64,000 nt of DNA from Bispira polyomma (taxonomy: Eukaryota): positions 37,882,001-37,946,000 of the forward strand of contig OZ287753.1 in the NCBI GenBank assembly GCA_965649765.1, read 5' to 3'. The notes under the pieces are model-generated. The model saw nothing but the letters and a program-made list of their open reading frames with translations. It was not told the DNA's origin and did no database searches. Both the position numbers and the translations under genes were made by a program. This document shows positions 37,001 to 52,000 of this stretch, one piece after another (the first letter of the stretch is position 1; the number at the start of each line of letters is the position of its first letter).

Positions 37001-40000
37001 TAACTGTAATACTATGTGAACCATATGTCTCATCTCGGGAGGTCCATAATATCCATTTTTAGATATAAATCGTGGGTATATAGAAGACTTTGTGCTTACA
37101 TTTTATTCTGAATGTATGCACATTGTCAGTTTTATGTCAGTTATAAATTTCTAACTACAAATTGCTTCCTGTGAATTCTGAGAGTCCAAACATTGTATCA
37201 CAAATTTTACCTTTCTGAAATTATTTTTGTACTATGAAGCCGTAATTTCAAAATCAATGTGTTATTTTAAGTTTAAAGAAACTACACCTTTCGTTGGTCA
37301 ACAATTGAATTTTGCACTTGATTTGCCTGAATATAACTTTTTAAAATAATCCAGTACAAAAAGAAATAGTGCTATGCAAACCAGTTGTTAATGTTAAAGA
37401 CATATTACAGTTTACGTAATATTGAATAGTGATAGATCAAAAAAAAATGAGGGGGAAAAGAAGATCTCCATGAAGATAGTGATTTTTTTAACACAAACAT
37501 TCAATGGCTGCAAGAAAGTTTTTTTAAACACAAAGATTGAAGGGATGGTAAATACCACATTATACAGTAAAAATATAAAATGATGATGATATTAATTGAT
37601 TTTTTGTTGATTCAAATTAGTCTGGGTTATCAAGCGTGAACTACTGTTCAGCACGGACGACTGCTATTTCCGAGATAGCAAATGGTCTGAGATGTCTTAT
37701 CAAAGTAGAACTAAAAATAGCTGTTAAAAACACAGACATTTTTCCTTAAGAGCATTCACCTGCCCATTTCAGTAAAATTTCCAATGCTTCATTTCCAGCT
37801 TTGGTTTCGGACAGTAGAGATGTTTTTTGATAGAAATTCCCCAAGATTTGTACATGTGTATACCTTAATATTTCGTAATTTCTAGAAGTTTCGACAATTT
37901 TTAGTTTCATAAGAGTGTTCTGTCTTTTGTTGGAGGATAAATGATGATCAAAGACTATAATAAGGTATTGTTGACATTGTTCAGAGACATTATCTCTAGT
38001 ATTGAGTCAATATTTGGTCAAATGTGAGCAATAAATCTATAATATAGCTGTGCAACAAAGGTTGTAAATGACTAATGTCTCTGTCCGTATGTTAACAAGT
38101 AACAAGCTGGAACCATCTATCAAAGAGTGTAGTTCTAATGAACTGATAATAGAAGCAGTGATCTTTGCCTCCTACATTATCAAGCTATTTATGATAACAT
38201 GTTTGGATAGTTTATTCCCTCTATCAAAAACCCCAGACTTAGACTTTTATATACACATGAAATGTGCAGCATATGAGATAACATGTGAATAGCCACATGC
38301 CTGTCTTTTTGGATATCATTCTTTTATAGAGAGAATATTATGTCTTTTATAAGTGTTTCACCACATTATTAAAAGGAAATATTTAGTTATTACATCATAA
38401 GAAGAATGTCGGAACGTATCGTCAATGGTGTTTCGGATGTGGAGATTGAAGAAACAATTGATTTAGGAAATATTGCCAGAAAATCTAAAGAAAATCTGGT
38501 ACACGACTCTCAGATCGGTTCAAATCAGCCCGGTATGCAAATGTCTTGGTCGTCCTCTGTAAGTGGTAAATCCCCCAGTCATGCATGCCCCACATGTGAC
38601 CTTGACCCAAACACTGTGCATGGATATATCACTGAGGCTGAGTTTGTACATACTACTCACAGGAAGGATGTCGAGATCAACAACCTCAACACCAGGGTGG
38701 AGGAGGAACAGTCTCTGGTGGCTCAACTACAGAAGAAGATCAAGGAACTCATGGTAAGTACTACAGTAGAAGAACATCTACTATCCAAATAGCTCACATT
38801 TTGTTCAGATCCTATACAAGTAAAAATTTCTACCAGGAATTAATTTTTCACAATTCCAGGTAATGATTTAGGATTAAAAATGAAGTCCCAGTGAACATTA
38901 AAATTTGCATTTATCTTTTAACTAAGAATTGGCCCTCAGTGAAATTTATTCCAGTGACTTTCTTAAAAATTGTTAGGATATGGGAAAACCACAAAACAAT
39001 AGAGTAATACCTCTTCCACTTTATGAACCTTTCTCTTCCAGCCAAAATTTACATTTCGTTCAGATCCTGTACAAATAGAAATTTCTACCAGGAATTAATT
39101 TTTCACAATTCCAGGTAATGATTTAGGATTAAAAATGAAGTCCCAGTGAACATTTAAATTTGCATTTATCTTTTAACTAAGAATTGGTCCTCAGTGAAAT
39201 TTATTCCAGTGACTTTCTTAAAAATTGTTAGGATATGGGACCTTTCTCTTCCAGCTAAAATTTACATTTCTACAGAAAGAGAAAGGTTCATAAAGTGGAA
39301 GAGGTATTGCTGTATTATGGTTTTCCCATATCCTAGTTGTCCGGTTTGAGTCCAGGTAATGCAATAATATTTATTGGGGGATTGAACAGTCCATTTCCTT
39401 CTGATGCTGATCAATGCTATCTTCCAGGATTATTCCTTCTCAGAGAAGATGCATTGTCTGTCATTTTAGGGCGATATTAAAGCTTCAGCTGCATAAATAA
39501 AGAATATCAAAACATGGAGCCATAATGTTTAATCTATATTATCAGGCTCATGTTCATTATCAATAGAAAAGGGTGTTGTATTCCGCTTACAATATTTTTT
39601 TACTTTAAAACATAATATCTTTAAGCACTTCTTAAGGTTTCATCTCATGAATTTGAACAGCTTGAGAATTCTTAGAACAAAGTATGTAAAACTGGGACAC
39701 CATAAGAGTTTTAGTTAAGATTGGTCTTAATTCTATAAAGTTACTGATATCTTGAAGCTGTACCAATAACAGTGTTTTTTCTGTGATGACCGGTAAAATA
39801 ATAACAAAGAAACATCTTCAGATGTTACAGCTAAAATGTACAATTTTTTATGTCAGTGTTACATTGACTTTTGCCATTTTCCTCCTGAGATAAAAAAGCA
39901 TCAACCGTCAAAACACTTCATATACTCATGGTATAAATGAAGCTCTCTACCTCACAGCTATCTACTCCTGCTTAACAAATTATAGAGCTCCAAGCCAATG

Positions 40001-43000
40001 TATCCTAAAGAATTGTTTTTTTACAGGTGGCATCTGCTTTTGCTGGTTTCTTTTAACTGTTTCTACCATAAGCTCTCACAGATTCCATTTTTATTTATCA
40101 TTTCGGGAATAGTTTTGTGTTCACACCAAAAAAACGGTCTAGCAGCTAGATAACAAACGAGTAGAACAAACGTTTACAGCTGAAGAGAGATGGGGATATA
40201 TTTTTTTACCCTACCTTTGAGCATTCTTGTTATCTGTTACCATGATAACTCTTGTCTGTAGCTACAGCTGCAGCATCACTTAGTGCCAGAGATGCATATT
40301 TCTTGGACTGTTTAAGCATCATTCTGACTCTCCCCCCCCCCTTCTCCTCTTCCTTTTTTTAAATTTTCTCTGTCCCTGTACTTCAATATAAACTGAACAT
40401 GTACACATCTTTGAGGCCTATGGAAATAACTTGTTTCAATTATAGATTAAATAGTCAAACCAAGTTAAAGTTCACATGTTTAGTTAGTTTATTGCATTTC
40501 AAATTCTCATCATTTCGGCTTTAGTTTCTTTAAATTGTACACCATAAATGAAATGATCATATGGTTTACCTTAAGTAATATCTTAGTTACAGAAGCTATG
40601 ACTCAATCCTTAAATTTGGTTCTCTGTAGACAAGTAGAATTCTTCAACCGTCTGAGAGATTTTTTTCTCAACTGGATTTTTCCACAACTATGTAGTAGTT
40701 TTTCAAGTAGGTTGGCTGACTGCAGTTGTTTTAGGGTGTTCTGAGAGGAGGCTGTAGAATTTCGGTGGTAGTACACTGGTGTGTGTACATTGTTGTTGAG
40801 CTGTTTCTCTTCTGCTAGATTCCTCTTAGATAATATCTGATTTCAGTGGATTTATGAGGTGGAATATCTTGCAGAAACTTTTAAGTGGATTAAAACCAAC
40901 CTCCTTGAGAGCAGAGTTTCTTGCTTTCATTTCGCAAAACAAACTGGACTTTCTTAGGAGTAAATAAGAAGGATACCATTACAACAACTTTACTCACTTT
41001 TTCGATTGGAATTGCAATTTTGGAAATTGCTTTGCATTCTGTTTTATGGATTGTTATAATAATCAACTAAAACTTCAAGATGGCAGACATACAAAATATT
41101 ACGAATGATACCGTCATCGTTTCTAGTTCAGCAGCATCAACCGTTGATAATGAACTAAAATGCCTATCAACAGATGATATCTCTTCAGATACTGTACCAG
41201 TAATGTCAATAATTGAAGGGGATAAAATCCATGTTAGAGCCTCAGATATTGGTTCAACTTTCAAAAAATCTGTTTCGCCAGTGCCAGAATTTAGTAATCT
41301 TACCAAGAGATATGATGATATTTTGGAAATTGATAAGGATTATAAAACAAGACTGCTTGACACAGCTGGAGCATTTAAGTCAAGTGTGCGAGATAACATC
41401 TACTCACACAAAGTGATAGCGGACAATCCTCCCGAGGCCTATGTTAATCCTCGTATTTCTAGCAGAAGCAGACATGTGATGAGACAGGCGTATGAGATGG
41501 GCTTCTGTTCTCCAGGTCTCAAGGCACTCTATGATGTAGGCAACACTGGTTATTAATAACAGAATAAGGTTCTATGTATTTAAAAAAAATATATTTCTAT
41601 GGCCTAGGCATCGAGAAGGCATGTTAATTATCAGCAATACAAAACAAAAGATACCTGTCTGGTGATGGAATTGCAGAAATATTATATTTGCAATAATCTT
41701 TTGCAGGATTTGCTGCTTAATTGTTGTCCCAGGTAGTTTTATGATTCTGTGACTTGTTATTTTTTCAGGCCCGCATTGAAGAACTTGAGGAGGAACTGGA
41801 AGCTGAGAGGCAGACCAGGTCAAAGGTCAGTAAACTATTGTTTGCATCGTCACTGGTTTTGCTAAAATAATTACAAGAAAATATTAGTTTTGTCTTAAAT
41901 GGTTTTGTTAAAAAATTCACGGTGTAGCTAAAATTCAAAATTTAAAATAGGCTTTGCAATTTAGTGACATATAAGATACAGTATAATGGAGAATGTTATT
42001 TGTCATGGAAAAATTTGGTATAGTCGTAAGCTATAGTAAAACAAATGCTTAAATATCTGTATAAAAAGATAAAGGAGTTTATCACAAGTTATTCTTTTGT
42101 TAAGTATAAAGTCACTTGCTATAATTCAGTATAGTTGTAATTTGCACTGGAATTCTATTGTTCTCAATTTGTGCATGTTATTCCACTTGAGATATCCACT
42201 TAATCATCACTAGATTAGATTAGACATTCAGTAAACCTAAATCTATGAGTCTGTGTTCAATTCTTACCACAAACTATCTGAGACACTAAACGCACAAAAG
42301 ACTAGTGTGTGCGGCATATCCTTTTGATTAGTGAAGGTATGCATTCCATTAAGTATATGACTCACACAAGTCTAAGTGATGTTGTTGATAGCACTACCAG
42401 ATGTGAGGCTGTATTTTTATCACACATAATATCCATCAGTGTCTGTAGAACTAAAGGAGAACACCTTCCAATGCCTTCTACTTAAGCACAAGCATTACTT
42501 ACTCAATCAGTTACTCTCGTAAAATAAGAAATAAATATCCTAAGTATTTTTTATCTAATTATTGGTTGCAGAAATAACTTGTTAAAAACTACTTTGGACT
42601 TTACTATGAAACATTCTTTAGTTTTAAGCCACTCACTATGCTAATGTGGTTTGCAATGTGGTTTGATATTTTCTGTATATTAACTGGATCATTCCGTTTA
42701 CTTAAATACTGTTCTGATTGTGATAGTTTATACTTTGGATCCATGGGATGATTAAGACACAATCTTCTTTAACATGCATCAAGTTTTTTTTAAAAATCGT
42801 GAAAATGTGGGTTATATAGATATGTTGGTCATTGACACTTTTCTTGATAAGCTTGAATTGCCAGAAACTTGAGGTGGAGCACATATCAACATCTCTAAAA
42901 TTCTTTACATCACCATCATTTTAAATGGTCATCAAGGCCACTATATCTACTCCTGCATCAGATAATAATTTCTGCAAATCATATACTGCCACTTTGTGGT

Positions 43001-46000
43001 GGGAATATGGTGGTATAGATCTAATGCTCTCACCTCCCAAGTCTTGGGTTCAATTGTCAGACACGACGTACCGTGTATATGTGTGAAAGTTCTTTGGGAA
43101 GTTTACTTTCTAGCATCAAACAACTGCCTGTTGAGATATAATGTGCTTTTCTTGTAGTTCATCAATGAATCTTAGTTTCTTGGTGACAGCCCTCTTTGTC
43201 TAGTATGGCCATTTATTGCCTTAGAAGATGCTAAGTCTCCCTTTTTGGTGACTTTATAAAGTTCCCATGACAATGCTAATATTGATGTGTAGTGGACATT
43301 TTCTTCTATAGTTTCTATTCTCTCTTTGCAGATTGACAAGCAGCGCCAGGCCCTGCAGCGTGAACTTGATGAACTCGGTGAGCGTCTGGATGAAGCTGGC
43401 GGCACCACTGCTGCTCAGGTAAAATCATTTATCATAACTATAATAAAATAGTTATACACAGCCCACAGTTTATACACCCTAACCTTTCTGAATATCCCAT
43501 GGGCATTAAACTTGAATTTAGGAAACTATATGGGATGGCCTCTACAGTGATTATGGTTTTCTGTTCCAAATATTATTTACAATACTAAATACTGGAGGTG
43601 GGCTATTTATAAAGGCATGAGCTATACTGATAGAATTCCATGTTCTTACACATTTCACACACTATAATCCTCTTACGTATGCTGACACATTAGGTTGAGC
43701 TAAACAAGAAGCGTGAGGCTGAGATCCAGTCTCTGAAGAGAGAGCTCGAGTCCCAGGCCATCCAGTCTGAACAACAGGTCGCCTCCATGAAGAAGAAACA
43801 GCAGGACTCTGTCAATGAACTCTCTGACCAAGTAGACAACCTGGCCAAGATCAAGAGCAAGTCAGTGTCTCATCATTATAGTACTTATCTCACCATATAG
43901 AGTCAACAACCTTTTTTACTAGCTTTAGAATTTGGTTATACAAATATTAAACCTAAAGCTAAATCTTTATAGCTGCAATATATTCCTCGAAAAAAGTTCA
44001 ACTCTGTGCCAAGAAGAAACAATTAGATTACTTCTGTGATAAAAAGGTCTGATCAAGATAAATTTAAATAAAGTTTACAACAGTATTCCTATTAAACAAT
44101 TATTAGTCGTCAAAGATTGTTATTCTGTTCTCTGTTTGTCTCAGCCAAACATATGGGCTGAAAGTATTGTTTCAAAGAATCTCATTTTCTGAGATAAGAA
44201 AAATTCTAAGTCTGCTAGTTCCCATTAAAAGTTGATCTCGACATGATTTTACTGTTGGGTATAACTTTGTTCTGCTTAATTTACTGTATCCAGGGACTGT
44301 AATTTTTGCAAACGTCTTCAGTGTAACTGTAACTGTACTTAAATGCCTTATCTAAACAATGTCACTCATTATAGCTCTCTTTAGTTTATAGACTGTTACA
44401 TATAGTTCTGTACTTGTAATTTACTGCATGGAATTGAATTAAATTATTCTTTTCTCTTCTTATTTAAGACTATACTCAGTCTAACTACTTAAATTATTTA
44501 AGCTTTTTAAGATATGAATACACTTTTAATTGGTGCATGATTCTGTCATCTATTTTTCTATCATTTTCAATACTTTTGTCATATTTTCCAAATTTTATAC
44601 AAGCACAGGTTTAATATTTTTGTTAAGTTTTGCACTTAAGATTTATGCAGCACAGTAAACCAGGGTCAAGTTAAATCGTAAGGCTTGCACCATTCTCTTT
44701 GATGTCATGGGTTCAAATATTCAGGCCTTTTAAAATGAATGTGGGAAAGTTGGCAGTAGACTTGCTAAAGGCTAGTGGTTTGCAGAACAGAAAACTCTTG
44801 ATCAACTACCCTGTGCCCTGATTTCCACCATTAGTGAACTGCCCCCATTGTGATATGACACAAAGACGTGTTAAAAGCCACATTAAACCCAAAATAAAAT
44901 AATTTATTTATGAATGGTCATCCAAGAGGTATATCTACTTAAGAGGGTGTTTGTGACTGTACCTAGGAATGCACTACTGTTCTGATTTAGGGTTGAAAAG
45001 GAGAGGAACCAACTCAAGGTTGAACTAGATGATATCCAGGGACAACTGGAACACGTCAGCAAGGGCAAGGTAAACCAAAAACACCCAGAATTTGATGTCA
45101 AGGTTCCCACAGGGCATGCATGAAAAACCTCGGTCCACACAAACTTAAGCTCAACTCAATGAGCTATCTTTGTAATATATGATTGTTACATGGAAATATT
45201 CTATGCTTGTAACCATTCATTTTAATAGAGCTTTCAGTACTAAATTCAAATATGTACTCAAATTTTACCAATTTACTGCTTTATAATCTAGCATGAGAGA
45301 TATATGTGTACACCTTTGATTTGAGCTTAAGTATTTTAGAGAATACGTCCACAGGAACAAGATAGAAAATCCAGTCAGAATTTTATGAAAGCGATAAAAT
45401 CCCACAACTACTGCCAAAATGAGCAAATATGATACCAGTCGTGTGATATTTTCACATTACATTCCAAAAACCATCTGACAAAAGTAACCTTTTAACAATC
45501 TGCACATATTTTGGTTAACGTTAAAGCTAGAGATTGGTCTGGAAATGATTGTTGTATTAGGTGATAGGAGGCCGTACGTTGCAAAATCGTCTCAAAATTC
45601 AAATATCGCAAAGTTAAATGATTACATATGAATCTGGAAAGTGAAAATTGTGACTGGAAAACTTTTGAAAAAAAAGTTTTAATGTCCCACCATTGGTCTA
45701 ATCTACTTACACTGTGTTTTGGTTTGAAGTGAACAAGCATGAATAACTGCATGAATATCTCTACCTTACTTTTATATATGATCCAGTCGGTTTTATACAA
45801 AATCTTCTCCAGCCTAAAATATGAATAAGCAATGCTGACCAGTGTCCAGGCTAAAATCTGGAAAGAGTAATGCTGACCAACGTCCACAATTATATTTAGA
45901 CAGAAATCCTACTTAACATCTCTATAATATTGTGTGCATCACGCAGCATTCAACCTAATATTTTCTTGTGAGTCTTTTACATTTTAAGCACACAGTACTT

Positions 46001-49000
46001 GCACAACAACACAGAGCATAAATAGCTCAGAAAATAGCAATAATTTCCTGTTTTGATTTTTCTAAATAAAATATTGATGCATGGTCTTTTATTTCTTATT
46101 GTTAGTTGCATGCTAATAACCGTAGCTGTACCTGTAGAAGTTAATATCAATAGAACAGTTCCATCATTTTTCTATTACTATGACTAACATATAAAAAGAA
46201 TAAATAGTGATGTTAACATGATAATGGCTTAAGGCTTTTCAAAAGCTTTTAACCCATTTTTGTCTGGTAAAATTGTAATGTAGGCTTTCTATTAACTAAT
46301 AGTAGGTATATTAACTGTTGGAAAAATTACACCACAACCCAGATGTAACACAGGTGTAACTCTAAAAGCATGTCAACAACTTTTCAGCATGTGTGTGTGT
46401 GTCCCCATGTTTATAGTGTGTGTTTTACAGAAGTGACAAAGAAAGGCATGAACTTGAAAAGGAATGTGAAGAACTGCTTATTAGTTTAGAACAGTCAGAA
46501 AGAATAAGGGTAGGTTCCTGTCACAGAAGTAAAAAGCTAAATATTTAGTTTACGCGACTAAATTGAATGCAGTAGAACCTCTATTATTGTCTGAAGTTGT
46601 TGGGAGAGCAATATTGTTTGGGAAATCAAAGGTGCCTAAAATAGAATAGGCATTTTGGTATAAAACTACCAGAAAACATATATTTATGAGAATGGAAATT
46701 AGTTTATTAAGTCAAATCTTCAGATACTAGAAGTTCTAGTGCATTATATGGTGAAATATTCTAAATGTTGAAAAAACAAGCTGTACAATCGTCATGTTAA
46801 AATACAGAACTATCTTTTAAACTTCAGCAATAAATATAAAATATTCTTTTATTGCTAGCTGAAAACTAATTCTGTCCTTTGACACACAATACGTGTACAT
46901 CTCCTTTAAATGAAGTCACTGTACTATTAAGAGTTGTTGCTAGCTGTATATTAATGCCATCCTACCAGACACAATACGTGTATGTCTTTTTCAAACAAAG
47001 TCACTGTACTACTATTTAAACAGAGCCAGGCTGACAAGATGGGCAAACAGTTGGAATCTCAACTCGGAGATCTCAATTCCAAACTGGATGATGCCAGCCG
47101 CAACATCCAGGACATGACATCCCAGAAGAACCGCCTGGAGCAGGAGAACTCCGAACTGGGCCGCCAGTTGGAGGAGGCTGAGAGTCAGCTAAGCCAGCTG
47201 AACAAGCAGAAACAGGCTCTCCAGAAGGCCCTGGAAGAGGCCAAGGCACTGGCTGAAGATGAAGGCCGTATGCGTGCCAAGCTCCAGGGTGAAAACCGCA
47301 ACATGAATGCCGACCTAGACCAACTCCGCGAACAGATCGAGGAGGAAGCCGAGGGCCGTGCTGACCTACAGAGGCTCCTGACCAAGGCCAATGGAGAGAT
47401 CCAGACCTGGCGCCGCAAGTTTGAGAGCGGTGAGGGTGGTGTACGCTCCGAGGAGATGGACGACCTCAAGAGGAAGATGAACCAGAAACTGGCAGATGCT
47501 GAAGCTCAACTGGAAGCTGCTCAGAGCAAGGCCAGCTCTCTGGAGAAGGCAAAGAACAGGTATAACAAAGTGGTTGTGGAAGACAAATTATATATGGGGG
47601 AGAGTGGTTTTATCATTGTAGCATTAAGTGTTTTTGGCAAGCAGGGAAGATATTTATACTTGTTATCAATGTTAAACTTTTGATACAATCATGCACTTGC
47701 TACTTCTGTGTAAGCAAACAGTTTTATGGGAGGATGTTATTTCACTGGATTTAGTGATTTCATAGTAAATTTTAAATTTAAACCCATTGTGATGTTACAG
47801 TATAATCTCCATATATTTTACGTTCACAGAAACCAGCTAAAATGTTTGATAATCACAACAATTTTACTGATGGCCAAATAAATTTATTCATTACAGAGAG
47901 GCGTTTACCATTCAGAAGTGCCCACCAACTGAGATATTGCTATATTGCTACAATAAACTCTCTTCTGTATTATTTCAGATTGTTACAGTATAATCTCCAT
48001 ATATTTAACGTTCACAGAAACCAGCTGAAATGTTCGATAATCACTGTACAATTTTACTGATGGCCAAATAAATTTATTCATTACAGAGAGGCGTTCACCA
48101 TTCAGAAGTGCCCACCAACTGAGATATTGCTATATTGCTACAATAAACTCTCTTCTGTATTATTTCAGACTCCAGGGTGAACTGGAAGATCTTATGATTG
48201 AGGTTGAAAGGTCCACAGCTATCGCCAATCAAGCTGAGAAGAGGCAACGTAGCTTTGACAAGACCGTTGATGAATGGAAGCGCAAGGTTGCTGACCTGCA
48301 GGCTGAACTGGAAAGAAGCAATGCTGAAGGTCGCGGCAATGCTGCTGAAGTGTACAAACTGAGATCTCAACTGGATGAGACCAGTGACACCATTGACGCT
48401 CTTCGCAGAGAGAACAAGAATTTGGCTGGTATGTAAAGTGATTGTTGTACTTACAGTAGAACCTTTATTATCTGAGCTTCTATTATTTGAATATTTGATT
48501 GTATGAACACCTTTTCTACTTTAATTCCTCTTGCCAGATTCATGACATGAAACCCTATAGTATATAATACAGAGAAACCACAATTATTCAAATACCCCTG
48601 ATTTTAGATAAGCTCAATAGGCCATAAAAAAATTCTTAGACATGATGATCTAACAACTTTCCAGTCTATTAATAATGGACAGGTCTTTTATATCAAAGGA
48701 ACACGTGTCTTTCATCAACTAAAAAATATTTAATAAGTAATATTTCTACTTAAAAAACATTTAAGGCTATACTAGCATTTTTATGTACAAAACTACTTAA
48801 GTGTGATGCTATAAAATATCTAGACCTTGATTTTACATAAGCTCACTGGGCCATGTCAAAGTACTTATCATCTCCTATACAGTGTATTTTCAAGAGCTTC
48901 TGTTTTAGTTCACATGTTTTTTTACCTTCTTACAGATGAAATCCATGACCTAACTGACCAACTTGGTGAGGGAGGCCGTAGCGTACATGAACTCGAGAAA

Positions 49001-52000
49001 TCTCGTAAACGTCTGGAAATGGAGAAGGAAGAGCTGCAGTCCGCTCTGGAGGAGGCTGAGGCAGCCCTGGAACAGGAGGAGTCCAAGGTACAGCGTACAC
49101 AGCTTGAGATGAGCGCCATCAGACAAGACATCGACCGCCGCATGGCTGAGAAAGAGGAGGAATTCGACAGCAGCCGGTTAGTTTAACACTTCAACGCACA
49201 TGGGCTAAATGAACACAGGATGCAGCTGCAGATCAAAAAGTCCATCTCAATCATAGTTTCTCATACGCTGCACCCAAGTTATATGATGGCCTACCACATG
49301 ATATTAGATGTTCACCTTTCGCTTTCAACTTTTAGAGTTCAAGCTCTCAACCTATCTCTATCAAAAAGCTTATCCACGACTCCTTCCCTGGTAACGATTT
49401 TTTTTGCGCCTTAGAATTAGCTAGTACGGAGATTAAGCGCCATTACGGAATTGATTAGATCAGATTAGATATTGAAAGTAGTATCTCCTAATTATCACAC
49501 TATTTTTTACAGGATAAGAATTTTCAAGAGAGAATATCTAAGCAAATCTAAGTACAATATTTAAAATTTACAAATGTAAAGTAACAGCTAATTAATAAAA
49601 AATTATTTGGACAGCAGAATTATTATCTGAAGATGTTGGGAAAGCCTGTTTGTTTGTTTTTTTGGATAATAGAAGGTTCGTAAAACAGAAGAGGTATTTT
49701 AGTATAAAACATTAAGAGAATTGAAATGTGTGAAGGTAAAAGTGTGCTAAACTTCATAAAATTCAATATTCAGATGACAAAAGTTTGTATAATATTCTAC
49801 TATATTACATTTACAGCAAGAACCACCAACGTGCTCTTGACTCAATGCAAGCCAGTCTGGAAGCTGAGGCCCGTGGCAAGGCTGAAGCCATGCGCATGAA
49901 GAAGAAACTAGAATCTGATATTAATGAACTCGAGGTGGCCTTAGATGGTGCTAACCGCGGACGTGCTGAGGCTGAGAAGAACATCAAGAAATATCAACAA
50001 CAAATCCGTGAATTACAGATGTCTATTGAGGATGAACAGCGCAGCAGAGATGAAGCTCGTGAGGCCTACGCATCTTCTGAACGCCGTTCCAATGTCCTGG
50101 CTGGTGAAATTGAGGAACTGAGGACACAGCTCGAATCTGCTGAGCGTGCCCGCAAGGCTGCTGAGAGTGAGCTCCATGAAGCCAGCGATCGTGTCTCTGA
50201 GCTTTCTACACAGGCAGCCACACTCAATGCTGCCAAGAGGAAGCTGGAAACTGATGTACAGGCCATGCAGGTACAATTTGTATGACTAGATCATTGTTAC
50301 TGCTGTAAAATGTGTCAATTGCAGGATGCAAATCTAGTACTATAAAATGAGACAAAATGATGACCAGATTAAATTTCTTAAGATACTTATTATGAATACA
50401 TATAAGTTTTTATGCAAATATATATCGTAATTGCAGCTAATTAAAATGTTTATTGTTACAGAAGTTAATTGATATTGTTGTTCTGCTTTAGAAGATGCTT
50501 TGCATCTCTAAAGCACATTAAAAATCCACCATACAATACAACAAATTTATAATAATTATATATGAAAAGAACATATCTTTATTATACCAAAGGTATACAA
50601 TTATTTCTTGTGACACATATACTAAGTATTTTATCGTTGTGACAGACTCCACATTTTCTTTTCATTTCAGACCGATCTTGAAGACCAATCTGCCGAACTT
50701 AAAAACTCTGAAGATAATTCCAAGAAGGCCATGGCTGATGCTGCCAAGCTGGCTGAAGAGCTCCGCCAGGAACAGGACCATGCCGGACACATTGAGAAGA
50801 TGCGTCGCACTTTGGAGAGCCAGGTGAAGGAACTCCAGGGCCGTCTGGATGAATCCGAGGCGAATGCCATGAGAGGTGGCAAACGCATAATGCAGAAGCT
50901 CGAACAGCGCGTGCGTGAGTTGGAAGTTGAGGTCGACAATGAACAGCGCCGCAACAATGAGTCACAGAAGGGCATGCGCAAGCAGGAACGTCGTTTAAAG
51001 GAGTTGGCCTACCAGTCCGACGAGGACCGCAAGAGCCAGGAGAAACTGCAAGAGATGATCGAGAAGCTGCAGCAGAAGATCAAGACCTACAAGCGCCAAG
51101 TAGAGGAGGCTGTAAGTGTTTTAAATTTGTAGAGTTCCAAAAACTAGGAATCTAAAATTCACCACTGTATATCTAATGTCGCCACCTAGAAAATTTGTTA
51201 TATGTTTGCTGAAATTAAGATTTTTGTGACTATTTGGCCTTACTTACCTAGAATCAAGTTTTTATTTGTTTTTATTGATTTGGCTTCATTTGTAATACAG
51301 TCATAGTTAAAATTATTACTTTCTCTTATACTCGGATTTTTATTCATTAAAATTTACGAGTTGTCAATGTTTTTTTGGGTTTGCTATTAAGGAAAACCAG
51401 CGATTTAGTTTCAACACAAACTAATTACTTGGTACATTCTGGTCAATGTTGACTAAAAGTACACATGTAGTTGTGTACGAAATGATACAGTGCTATCCTT
51501 CAGTAGTTTATATTATAGGGATTGATACCTGCTGCAGAGTAATCTTATATACTGTAGAACCTCTATTTTAAAAAATTCTGTTACTTATATATTCAATGAT
51601 AAAGTGATTTTTCACCATCCCAATTTAATTATAATTTTTCCCCAAATGTCTTATAATTGAGATTTCTATACAGTTTTATAACATTTAAAATTAAAATATG
51701 CCATGAGATCTTGGCATCTTAGCATGTGTCAACACTGCTTTTACCCTTTTATCTCAAAATTACAGGAGGAAATTGCTGCTGTCAACCTGGCCAAATACCG
51801 CAAGGTACAGCATGATGTGGAAGAAGCTGAAGAACGTGCTGACATGGCAGAAAATACCTTGGCTAAGCTCAGGGCTAAGAACAGGAGTTCTGTGTCTTCT
51901 TCTAGGACAACCAGCTCCGTAAGTGACCATTAAAGTGTAGCATTAAGTATGATTCGAAACTTCATTCAAAGCCAAATATTTATGGCTTGTTTATAGTTTG

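What the first reader, a model, noticed from the sequence alone, without database searches (positions are those of the whole stretch)
41080..41535. Catchin/myorod-like first exon inside intron 24
Seen: the longest non-myosin ORF in the window, with a start context like the main ATG (caagATG), an in-frame stop 12 nt upstream and a phase-0 donor (GAT|gtaggc) matching exon 25. The product is 152 unique aa plus 825 rod aa plus tail. Known: bivalve catchin is a headless Mhc product of about 156 unique plus 830 rod residues, abundant in catch muscle. The Ser/Arg-rich end ([13 protein letters not shown]) is a candidate kinase target. If the host is not a bivalve, this would extend the known range of the catch-associated protein.
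Basis: partly seen in the sequence, partly recalled or inferred. Interest (0 to 1): 0.8.

Follow-up and report, generated by a model that had tools for sequence, protein, structure and literature searches.

The report
Catchin-type headless myosin exon, annelid
Inside an intron of a worm's muscle myosin gene sits a conserved alternative first exon that should produce a "headless" myosin rod protein related to mollusc catchin/myorod, which suggests this protein predates molluscs and is not tied to bivalve catch muscle.

Summary
Window 41080-41535 (+) is a 152-codon ATG ORF with an in-frame TAA 12 nt upstream. It ends in a phase-0 donor (GAT|GTAGGC). After 233 nt comes the rod exon [14 protein letters not shown].

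ORF length alone is only marginal (about 5% of simulated windows). Conservation is what decides it:
- 34 protein clusters match, and every alignment stops at the donor.
- dN/dS against the nearest relative is 0.22.
- Four other loci show the same gene position.
- The exon is single-copy in the 1.04-Gb genome.
- Transcript contigs from relatives are spliced at the homologous donor onto the rod, and their 5' ends lie inside the intron.

Profile comparison links the exon family to the published Crassostrea and Mytilus catchin exons (97% probability, E about 1e-11; shuffles score far lower).

The host is not a bivalve or any mollusc. Its myosin carries signatures found only in annelids, and its mitochondrial gene arrangement matches the unusual one of the fan worm Sabella.

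The mapped mussel phosphosite Thr141 is Ala here, but two nearby serines are invariant. No RNA data exist for this species.

The catchin exon was already reported in gastropods in 2014. I found no report from annelids. Verdict: a real new member of a known kind, of moderate interest.

The parts
38664..38753 (+). [quoted passage not shown] It is the last full-length-specific rod exon before the intron that holds the alternative first exon, and it ends in phase 0.
   Evidence: Sequence read. It is conserved upstream of the unique exon in L002, L006 and L007/8.
40219..40330 (+). Conserved non-coding block 750-860 nt upstream of the ATG. It contains an E-box (CAGCTG). Candidate enhancer or promoter element of the internal transcription unit (inferred).
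   Evidence: 80.5% identity to L002, while the surrounding intron gives no blastn match.
40874..41021 (+). Second conserved block just upstream of the ATG. Candidate core promoter or 5'UTR (inferred).
   Evidence: 70% identity to L002. In a relative, a 169-nt 5'UTR is contiguous with the coding part in genomic DNA.
41068..41070 (+). In-frame TAA 12 nt upstream of the ATG. It rules out read-in from any upstream acceptor.
41080..41319 (+). Residues 1-80 of the unique domain. Acidic (pI 4.4), 29% Ser+Thr+Pro, predicted disordered, poorly conserved.
   Evidence: dN/dS 0.34.
41320..41535 (+). Residues 81-152: the conserved block (DxDYxxRL ... SVRDNIxSH ... [30 protein letters not shown]). Basic, predicted as short helices. 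S127 (41458-41460) and S130 (41467-41469) are invariant. Ala137 (41488-41490) is the position of Mytilus Thr141.
   Evidence: dN/dS 0.12.
41536..41768 (+). The 233-nt intron, from donor GTAGGC to acceptor ttgttattttttcag.
   Evidence: The homologous introns in relatives are 90-386 nt.
41769..41825 (+). Exon 25 ([19 protein letters not shown]), the first rod exon shared by full-length myosin and the headless isoform.
   Evidence: This is the same junction as in all published catchins and in transcripts of relatives.
43694..51933 (+). Remaining shared rod exons and the first tailpiece stop. About 825 rod residues in total from 41769.
   Evidence: Collinear tblastn of a relative's rod.

Best explanation
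[quoted passage not shown] It is the annelid counterpart of molluscan catchin/myorod.

Proposed mechanism:
1. Transcription starts at a promoter inside intron 24, upstream of 41080 (inferred).
2. The exon supplies a 5'UTR and 152 codons.
3. Its phase-0 donor at 41535 joins exon 25 at 41769.
4. The product is the unique domain fused to the last ~825 rod residues plus an alternative tailpiece.

The rod part should dimerise and co-assemble with myosin on paramyosin-containing thick filaments, as shown for mussel myorod. The unique domain has two parts. One is a disordered acidic Ser/Thr-rich arm (residues 1-80). The other is a conserved basic helical block (residues 81-152) that runs straight into the coiled coil. 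That block carries two invariant serines and is the likely regulatory or binding module.

The host is an annelid, most like a sabellid fan worm. The isoform therefore predates the mollusc-annelid split.
For: Shown in this window:
- Exon anatomy and reading phases.
- Single copy in the 1.035-Gb genome.

Shown by comparison:
- 34 representative clusters match (15 at E<=1e-10). All alignments end at residue 152, and the hit ORFs continue with Val, the GTN of the donor.
- The order exon 23b, exon 24, unique exon, [14 protein letters not shown] exon recurs in L002, L006 and L007/8, with donors TAY GAT|GTA.
- dN/dS is 0.22 overall and 0.12 for residues 81-152, at dS about 1.

Shown in relatives:
- Three full-length spliced products exist: P0037, P0043 and P0044, each a unique domain plus Myosin_tail.
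- Transcript contig L001, nt 1-623, is collinear with genomic contigs L010-L013. It then leaves them at ...TATGAC|GTAGGA for the rod exon.

Homology to catchin:
- hhalign 97% probability against two published catchin blocks, with shuffle controls.

Host placement:
- The motifs YHYAG, DTKHK, LEDWRDE and HIFYWLL occur only in the annelid entries of the labelled Mhc dataset, and the window carries all of them.
- The mitochondrial contig C75 is 15,503 bp. It has cox1-cox2-atp8-x-cox3-D...W-V plus nad3 on one strand, all other protein genes on the other strand, and two trnM predictions. PMC7889199 describes this arrangement as unusual and specific to Sabella spallanzanii.
Against: - There is no RNA evidence for this species. 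The only public runs that hold the exon are DNA contigs collinear with the genome. Expression, the transcription start and the 41535^41769 junction are therefore inferred from relatives.
- The organisms behind the homologous hits are unnamed. Their annelid nature is inferred only for L006 and L007.
- The N-terminal 80 residues do not align to mollusc catchins.
- The one mapped regulatory site of myorod (Thr141) is absent.
- ORF length alone is not significant.
- Brachiopods, nemerteans and phoronids are absent from the labelled myosin dataset. 'Annelid' therefore rests on that dataset plus the mitochondrial arrangement.
Confidence: 0.88

Rival explanations
1. A chance open reading frame in an AT-rich intron, with no function.
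For: 11 of 200 simulated windows contain an ATG ORF of this length. There is no Pfam match, no Atlas hit and no fold match.
Against: 34 homologous clusters match, with homology ending at the donor. dN/dS is 0.12-0.22 at dS about 1. Position is conserved in four other loci. Relatives have spliced transcripts.
Confidence: 0.01
2. A transposon-derived or stand-alone nested gene. Under this reading the 158-aa ORF is translated on its own and never spliced to the rod.
For: The ORF has its own stop 21 nt into the intron.
Against: It is single-copy in the genome. Every located homologue (five other loci examined) sits at the same place inside a myosin gene. Conservation stops at the GT. Relatives' mRNAs are spliced there.
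Confidence: 0.02
3. A real conserved exon that is used differently in this species. It could be a cassette inserted into full-length myosin via the AG just before the ATG, or a silent relic.
For: An AG dinucleotide immediately precedes the ATG (ttcaag|ATG), and exon 24 ends in phase 0. There is no host RNA.
Against: That AG is not conserved: L002 has ...GTAATATGG and L001/L010 have ...AAAAACATGG. No pyrimidine tract precedes it. Purifying selection against the closest relative argues against a relic. The relative's transcript starts inside the intron.
Confidence: 0.06
4. The host is after all a mollusc, possibly a bivalve, so this would be ordinary catchin.
For: The myosin head exons score best against squid and scallop S1 in the PDB. 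However, the PDB holds no annelid myosin. The genome has a large tyrosinase family (at least 38 hits), as bivalves do.
Against: Annelid-exclusive myosin motifs are present and the mollusc states (HHYAG, TKAKRQ, AEYRLG[NT]TKVFFKAG) are absent. The mitochondrial blocks are annelid-type and the strand layout is Sabella-like. The exon belongs to an 'LYD'-type family. The phmmer search did not retrieve the classical mollusc 'LLE'-type exons.
Confidence: 0.03

Closest known systems
Catchin / myorod of bivalves (Mytilus galloprovincialis, Argopecten irradians; Yamada et al. 2000, cited in PMC4410989 and PMC12040844). Predicted catchin exons were also reported in Crassostrea Mhc2, Aplysia Mhc1, Biomphalaria Mhc1 and Lottia Mhc6 (Kollmar & Hatje 2014, PMC3912159 Fig. 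S3).
   Same: - A unique first exon lies in the myosin heavy chain intron directly before the exon that starts [14 protein letters not shown].
- The join is phase 0, and about 150 unique residues are fused to about 830 rod residues.
- The N-terminal arm is Ser/Thr-rich and non-helical.
- The last ~50 residues are homologous (hhalign 97%), including (L/I)S-x-(R/K)-S-(R/K)...PGLK.
   Different: - The host is an annelid, not a mollusc.
- The block ends ...[11 protein letters not shown] instead of ...DLA--PGLK-LLE.
- Mytilus Thr141, the smMLCK site, is Ala here (Gly in most relatives).
- The N-terminal 80-100 residues do not align.
- There is no expression or protein evidence in this species.
Drosophila myosin rod protein (Standiford et al. 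1997, as discussed in PMC3912159)
   Same: A headless product of the muscle myosin gene, made from an internal start, that joins thick filaments.
   Different: It starts about 260 residues further upstream as a 5' extension of an existing exon. Its N-terminus is not conserved even among flies (PMC3912159). There is no sequence relation to this exon.
Lottia gigantea Mhc8 (tail-only myosin gene, PMC3912159)
   Same: It begins at exactly the same rod position.
   Different: It is a separate duplicated gene and lacks the long unique N-terminal exon.

Membership tests
catchin / myorod (headless Mhc isoform) | The unique exon lies in the Mhc intron immediately upstream of the exon beginning [14 protein letters not shown]. 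| tested here: met
   41080-41535 lies between exon 24 (38664-38753) and exon 25 (41769). The junction is the same as in PMC3912159 Fig. S3.
catchin / myorod (headless Mhc isoform) | An in-frame splice adds the C-terminal ~830 residues of the myosin rod. | tested here: met
   The donor and acceptor are both phase 0. The rod is collinear for about 812 aligned positions plus the tail. This is predicted from DNA only.
catchin / myorod (headless Mhc isoform) | The unique domain is homologous in sequence to Mytilus/Argopecten-type catchin. | tested here: met
   hhalign of the Crassostrea and Mytilus blocks against family profile A1 gives probability 97.5% and 97.2%, E 7e-12 and 3e-11, over 49-50 columns up to the donor. 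Shuffles score at most 17 against 60. The N-terminal two thirds do not align.
catchin / myorod (headless Mhc isoform) | A non-helical N-terminal domain rich in Ser, Thr and Pro. | tested here: inconclusive
   Residues 1-80 are predicted disordered with 29% S+T+P, but Pro is scarce (3 residues). This is less extreme than the mollusc sequences.
catchin / myorod (headless Mhc isoform) | A phosphorylatable Thr141 (smMLCK site) in the unique domain. | tested here: not met
   Mytilus RDT(141)SDL aligns to RQA(137)YEM here, and to Gly in most relatives. This is a feature of mussel myorod, not shown to define the family. S127 and S130 are invariant in both types.
catchin / myorod (headless Mhc isoform) | Its own mRNA from an internal promoter. 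| tested here: inconclusive
   In a relative, the transcript's 169-nt 5'UTR is contiguous with intron DNA and holds no myosin exons. There is no RNA for the host.
catchin / myorod (headless Mhc isoform) | An abundant 110-120-kDa thick-filament protein of catch or smooth muscle, roughly 1:1 with myosin. | not testable with these tools
   This needs protein work on the host's muscles.
Annelida (host placement) | Annelid-exclusive Mhc motor signatures and annelid mitochondrial gene blocks. | tested here: met
   YHYAG occurs in exactly the three annelid entries of the Kollmar & Hatje Mhc dataset. LEDWRDE, HIFYWLL and DTKHK occur only in Helobdella Mhc1. The window has all of them. The mitochondrial layout equals the unusual Sabella spallanzanii layout. 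The dataset contains no brachiopods, nemerteans or phoronids.

The most novel reading that the evidence does not exclude
The catchin/myorod-type headless myosin would be an ancestral thick-filament component shared at least by annelids and molluscs, and not an adaptation for bivalve catch. On this reading its functional core is the ~70-residue block directly before the coiled coil, with two invariant serines. That block would act as a general phospho-regulated module of paramyosin-rich thick filaments. This worm's gene may even carry two nested headless isoforms, because the ORF at 38406 fused to exon 24 is also conserved in the nearest relative.
Probability: 0.55. Interest if true: 0.65.

Novelty: new member of a known kind. 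Interest (0 to 1): 0.52.

Why it matters
Reviews still describe myorod/catchin as specific to bivalve or molluscan catch muscle, and its function is unresolved (PMC12040844, PMC4410989).

A selected, spliced homologue in annelids moves the origin of the isoform back to the mollusc-annelid ancestor. That separates the protein from the catch phenomenon as such.

It also narrows the search for function. Only the last ~50-70 residues of the unique domain are shared across phyla. The mapped mussel MLCK site is not among them, whereas two serines, a Gly and the PGL(K/R) motif are. Those residues are direct targets for mutagenesis, phosphoproteomics and binding assays.

It also flags an isoform that genome annotation of annelids is likely to miss.

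Tried and rejected
- **Domain and fold searches.** Pfam scan of the 152 aa gave nothing. ESM Atlas by features gave no usable hit. Foldseek against the PDB with the AF2 model gave no match at E<=0.001, and the model has low confidence in its first half.
- **Word-indexed protein searches.** The three searches added little beyond the phmmer run. None returned an informative protein name or an organism (the only labels were automatic JGI ones).
- **Reads.** The three public runs that hold the exon are DNA contigs collinear with the genome, so no junction information was possible.
- **Naming the organisms behind the hits.** Run and assembly accessions (SRR25454218, SRR6218665, ERZ22147071, GCA_013332715, GCA_029979725) are not mentioned in the paper library. 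Peptide strings of the motif are not printed in any paper.
- **Guesses I dropped.** I tried matching hits to scallop or Mytilus by unique-domain length (133 or 156 aa). P0013's true ORF is longer, and residue 141 is not Thr in any 156-aa hit.
- **Bivalve or other mollusc host.** I considered this early. A hemocyanin beta-sandwich search was blank but uninformative, because its controls were also blank. Tyrosinase expansion pointed towards bivalves. The myosin signatures and the mitochondrial layout overruled both.
- The masked N stretch near 24.8-25.0 kb was left untouched.

Full report
**1. The observation**

- An ATG at 41080 lies in the context TTCAAGATGGC. The main myosin ATG at 887 lies in GTCAAGATGTC.
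- An in-frame TAA sits 12 nt upstream.
- 152 sense codons follow, ending in the donor GAT|GTAGGC at 41535/41536.
- After a 233-nt intron, the acceptor ttttttcag|GCCCGCATT at 41769 opens the rod exon [19 protein letters not shown].
- Exon 24 (38664-38753, ...KKIKELM|gtaagt) ends in phase 0, as does the new exon. Either can therefore join exon 25 in frame.
- The ORF is the longest non-myosin ORF in the window.

Its length alone is weak evidence. 11 of 200 first-order Markov simulations of the window contained an ATG ORF of at least 152 codons.

**2. It is a conserved, selected exon**

- phmmer against 1.84 billion representative proteins found 34 clusters at E<=1e-3, 15 of them at E<=1e-10. All are short ORFs of 90-255 aa called on genomic contigs.
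- Every alignment ends at query residue 152. The hit ORFs continue with a nearly invariant Val, which is the GTN of a splice donor.
- Conservation is concentrated in the last ~70 residues: DxDYTxRL ... SVRxNIxSHP...NRPE...NP.(I/L)SxRSRxVMRxGYDLGFxSPGLRxLYD.
- I fetched the loci of three hit clusters (P0001; P0008; P0004/P0038). In all of them the exon lies in the same place and orientation: exon 23b, exon 24, unique exon, then 90-386 nt later an acceptor and [14 protein letters not shown]. The donors read TAY GAT|GTA.
- Against the closest relative (L002, 66% amino-acid identity), dS is about 1 and dN/dS is 0.22. dN/dS is 0.12 for residues 81-152 and 0.34 for residues 1-80.
- Most of the flanking intron gives no nucleotide match to L002. 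The exceptions are discrete blocks at 40219-40330 (80% identity, containing CAGCTG) and 40874-41021.
- The exon is single-copy in the 1.035-Gb assembly. That excludes a transposon.

**3. It is spliced as predicted, in relatives**

- Cluster look-ups and a region-restricted search returned three full-length products of 990-1028 aa. Each is a homologous unique domain followed by ...LYD|ARIKELEEELE... and a Myosin_tail.
- The transcript contig L001 is collinear over nt 1-623 (99.4-99.8% identity) with four genomic contigs, L010-L013. That stretch is a 169-nt 5'UTR plus 152 codons.
- Exactly at ...CTCTATGAC the genome continues GTAGGAATC..., while the transcript continues GCTCGCATCAAAGAACTCGAG, the rod exon.
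- The transcript's 5' part holds no myosin head or S2 sequence. It therefore starts inside the intron.
- For the host itself no RNA is available. The three public runs that hold the exon are DNA contigs that run straight through the introns.

**4. It is homologous to catchin**

- Kollmar & Hatje 2014 (PMC3912159) print in Fig. S3 an alignment of catchin unique exons. It covers Argopecten, Mytilus, Crassostrea, Aplysia, Biomphalaria and Lottia.
- All end ...HP.L.S..Y......(R/K)(L/I)SA(R/K)SK(K/R)..R(D/E).(S/A)(D/E)L....P(G)LK..LE|[14 protein letters not shown].
- The Crassostrea block aligns to the family profile A1 with 97.5% probability and E 7e-12. The Mytilus block gives 97.2% and E 3e-11. 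Each covers 49-50 columns up to the donor.
- A reversed peptide scores 11.7 and one hundred shuffled peptides score at most 17.0, against 60.3 for the real one.
- Position, phase, downstream exon and sequence all agree. This is a member of the catchin/myorod kind.
- The family here forms a distinct 'LYD' type. The phmmer search did not retrieve the classical mollusc 'LLE' type.

**5. What is and is not shared with mussel myorod**

- The only mapped N-terminal site of myorod is Thr141, phosphorylated by smooth-muscle MLCK (PMC4410989; PMC12040844).
- Counting back from the end of the 156-residue Mytilus domain in Fig. S3, this is the T of RDTSDL. It aligns to Ala137 here and to a nearly invariant Gly in the family.
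It holds S127 and S130. These are invariant across all 35 sequences of A1 and are also present in the six published catchins as (L/I)S-A-(R/K)-S-K.
- AlphaFold2 with the family alignment gives mean pLDDT 62. Residues 1-80 are disordered. Helices are predicted at 88-95, 103-108, 111-115, 128-139 and 145-151, with pLDDT 70-88 in that half. No fold match was found.

**6. The host is an annelid, not a bivalve**

Myosin evidence:
- PDB searches only show that the myosin head resembles squid and scallop S1. The PDB holds no annelid myosin.
- In the labelled motor-domain alignment of PMC3912159 (Dataset S1), YHYAG occurs in exactly three sequences: Helobdella Mhc1, Helobdella Mhc2 and Capitella Mhc1. 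LEDWRDE, HIFYWLL and DTKHK occur only in Helobdella Mhc1.
- The window carries all of these. It also has Capitella's [18 protein letters not shown] instead of the mollusc AEYRLG(N/T)TKVFFKAG.
- The gene has three alternative copies of the [13 protein letters not shown] exon, which I take to be cluster-9. PMC3912159 reports more than two cluster-9 alternatives only for Capitella.

Mitochondrial evidence:
- Contig C75 is 15,503 bp. It has cox1-cox2-atp8-Y-cox3-D-N-A-L-T-W-V and nad3 on one strand. All other protein genes are on the other strand, including the block atp6-R-H-nad5-F-nad4L-nad4. There are two trnM(CAT) predictions.
- The protein-gene and strand layout matches what PMC7889199 describes as unusual among annelids and found in Sabella spallanzanii; the tRNA order differs somewhat.
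- The host is therefore most likely a sabellid-like fan worm.

Relatives:
- Two other loci with the exon (L006, L007) also carry the Capitella-type lever exon and at least two alternative [13 protein letters not shown] exons (four in L007).

**7. Novelty**

- The idea of catchin is known, and its exon was already reported outside bivalves in gastropods (PMC3912159).
- That paper analysed Capitella and Helobdella but reported no catchin exon for them.
- Reviews still call myorod specific to bivalve or molluscan catch muscle (PMC12040844, PMC4410989).
- My literature searches found no headless myosin described in annelids.
- I therefore rate this a new member of a known kind that widens its range to a second phylum.

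**8. Mechanism: shown versus inferred**

Shown:
- the exon anatomy and phases;
- purifying selection;
- conserved position in the gene;
- the homologous splice and the intronic 5' end in relatives;
- homology to catchin.

Inferred:
- an internal promoter in 38754-41079, with the two conserved blocks as candidates;
- expression in the host;
- coiled-coil dimerisation and co-assembly with myosin on thick filaments, by analogy with myorod;
- regulation through the invariant serines.

Noticed in passing
It shows 55% amino-acid identity over 76 residues (E 3e-19), directly abutting that relative's exon 24, and a 72% blastn block spans 38398-38758. No match was found in L006 or L007. It may be a second, lineage-restricted headless start of the Drosophila-MRP style.
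   Followed up: partly
window 38000-38217, 40219-40330, 40874-41021: Three non-coding blocks are 70-80% identical to L002, while the surrounding intron gives no blastn match. The 40219-40330 block contains an E-box (CAGCTG). These are candidate regulatory elements of the internal transcription units.
   Followed up: partly
G000 contig C75 (L003 + L004), 15,503 bp: The mitochondrial genome has cox1-cox2-atp8-cox3 plus a tRNA run and nad3 on one strand, and all other protein genes on the other. It has two trnM(CAT) predictions and 38.7% GC. This is the strand layout published as unusual for Sabella spallanzanii.
   Followed up: yes
G000, e.g. C1:104.9-105.1 Mb, C1:106.78-106.96 Mb, C12, C3: The genome has at least 38 tyrosinase-domain hits, many in tandem clusters spaced 15-90 kb apart. 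No hemocyanin-like multi-unit array is present. This may relate to tube or cement chemistry.
   Followed up: no
window 2301/3716, 6445/7217, 8815/10288, 15151/15886, 16780/17466/18744, 25298/26334/27752, 32985/34325/34856: The myosin gene has many sets of mutually exclusive exons. They include a switch-I pair and a three-way [13 protein letters not shown] set. The pattern matches what was published for Capitella and not the mollusc pattern.
   Followed up: partly
L005 1105-1728 (hit P0013, seawater metagenome scaffold): The unique exon of this hit really starts at an ATG 222 nt upstream of the called GTG start, giving about 207 aa. It ends ...APGLKLLFE|GTAAAG. That end is intermediate between the annelid 'LYD' type and the mollusc 'LLE' type. 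The organism is unknown.
   Followed up: partly
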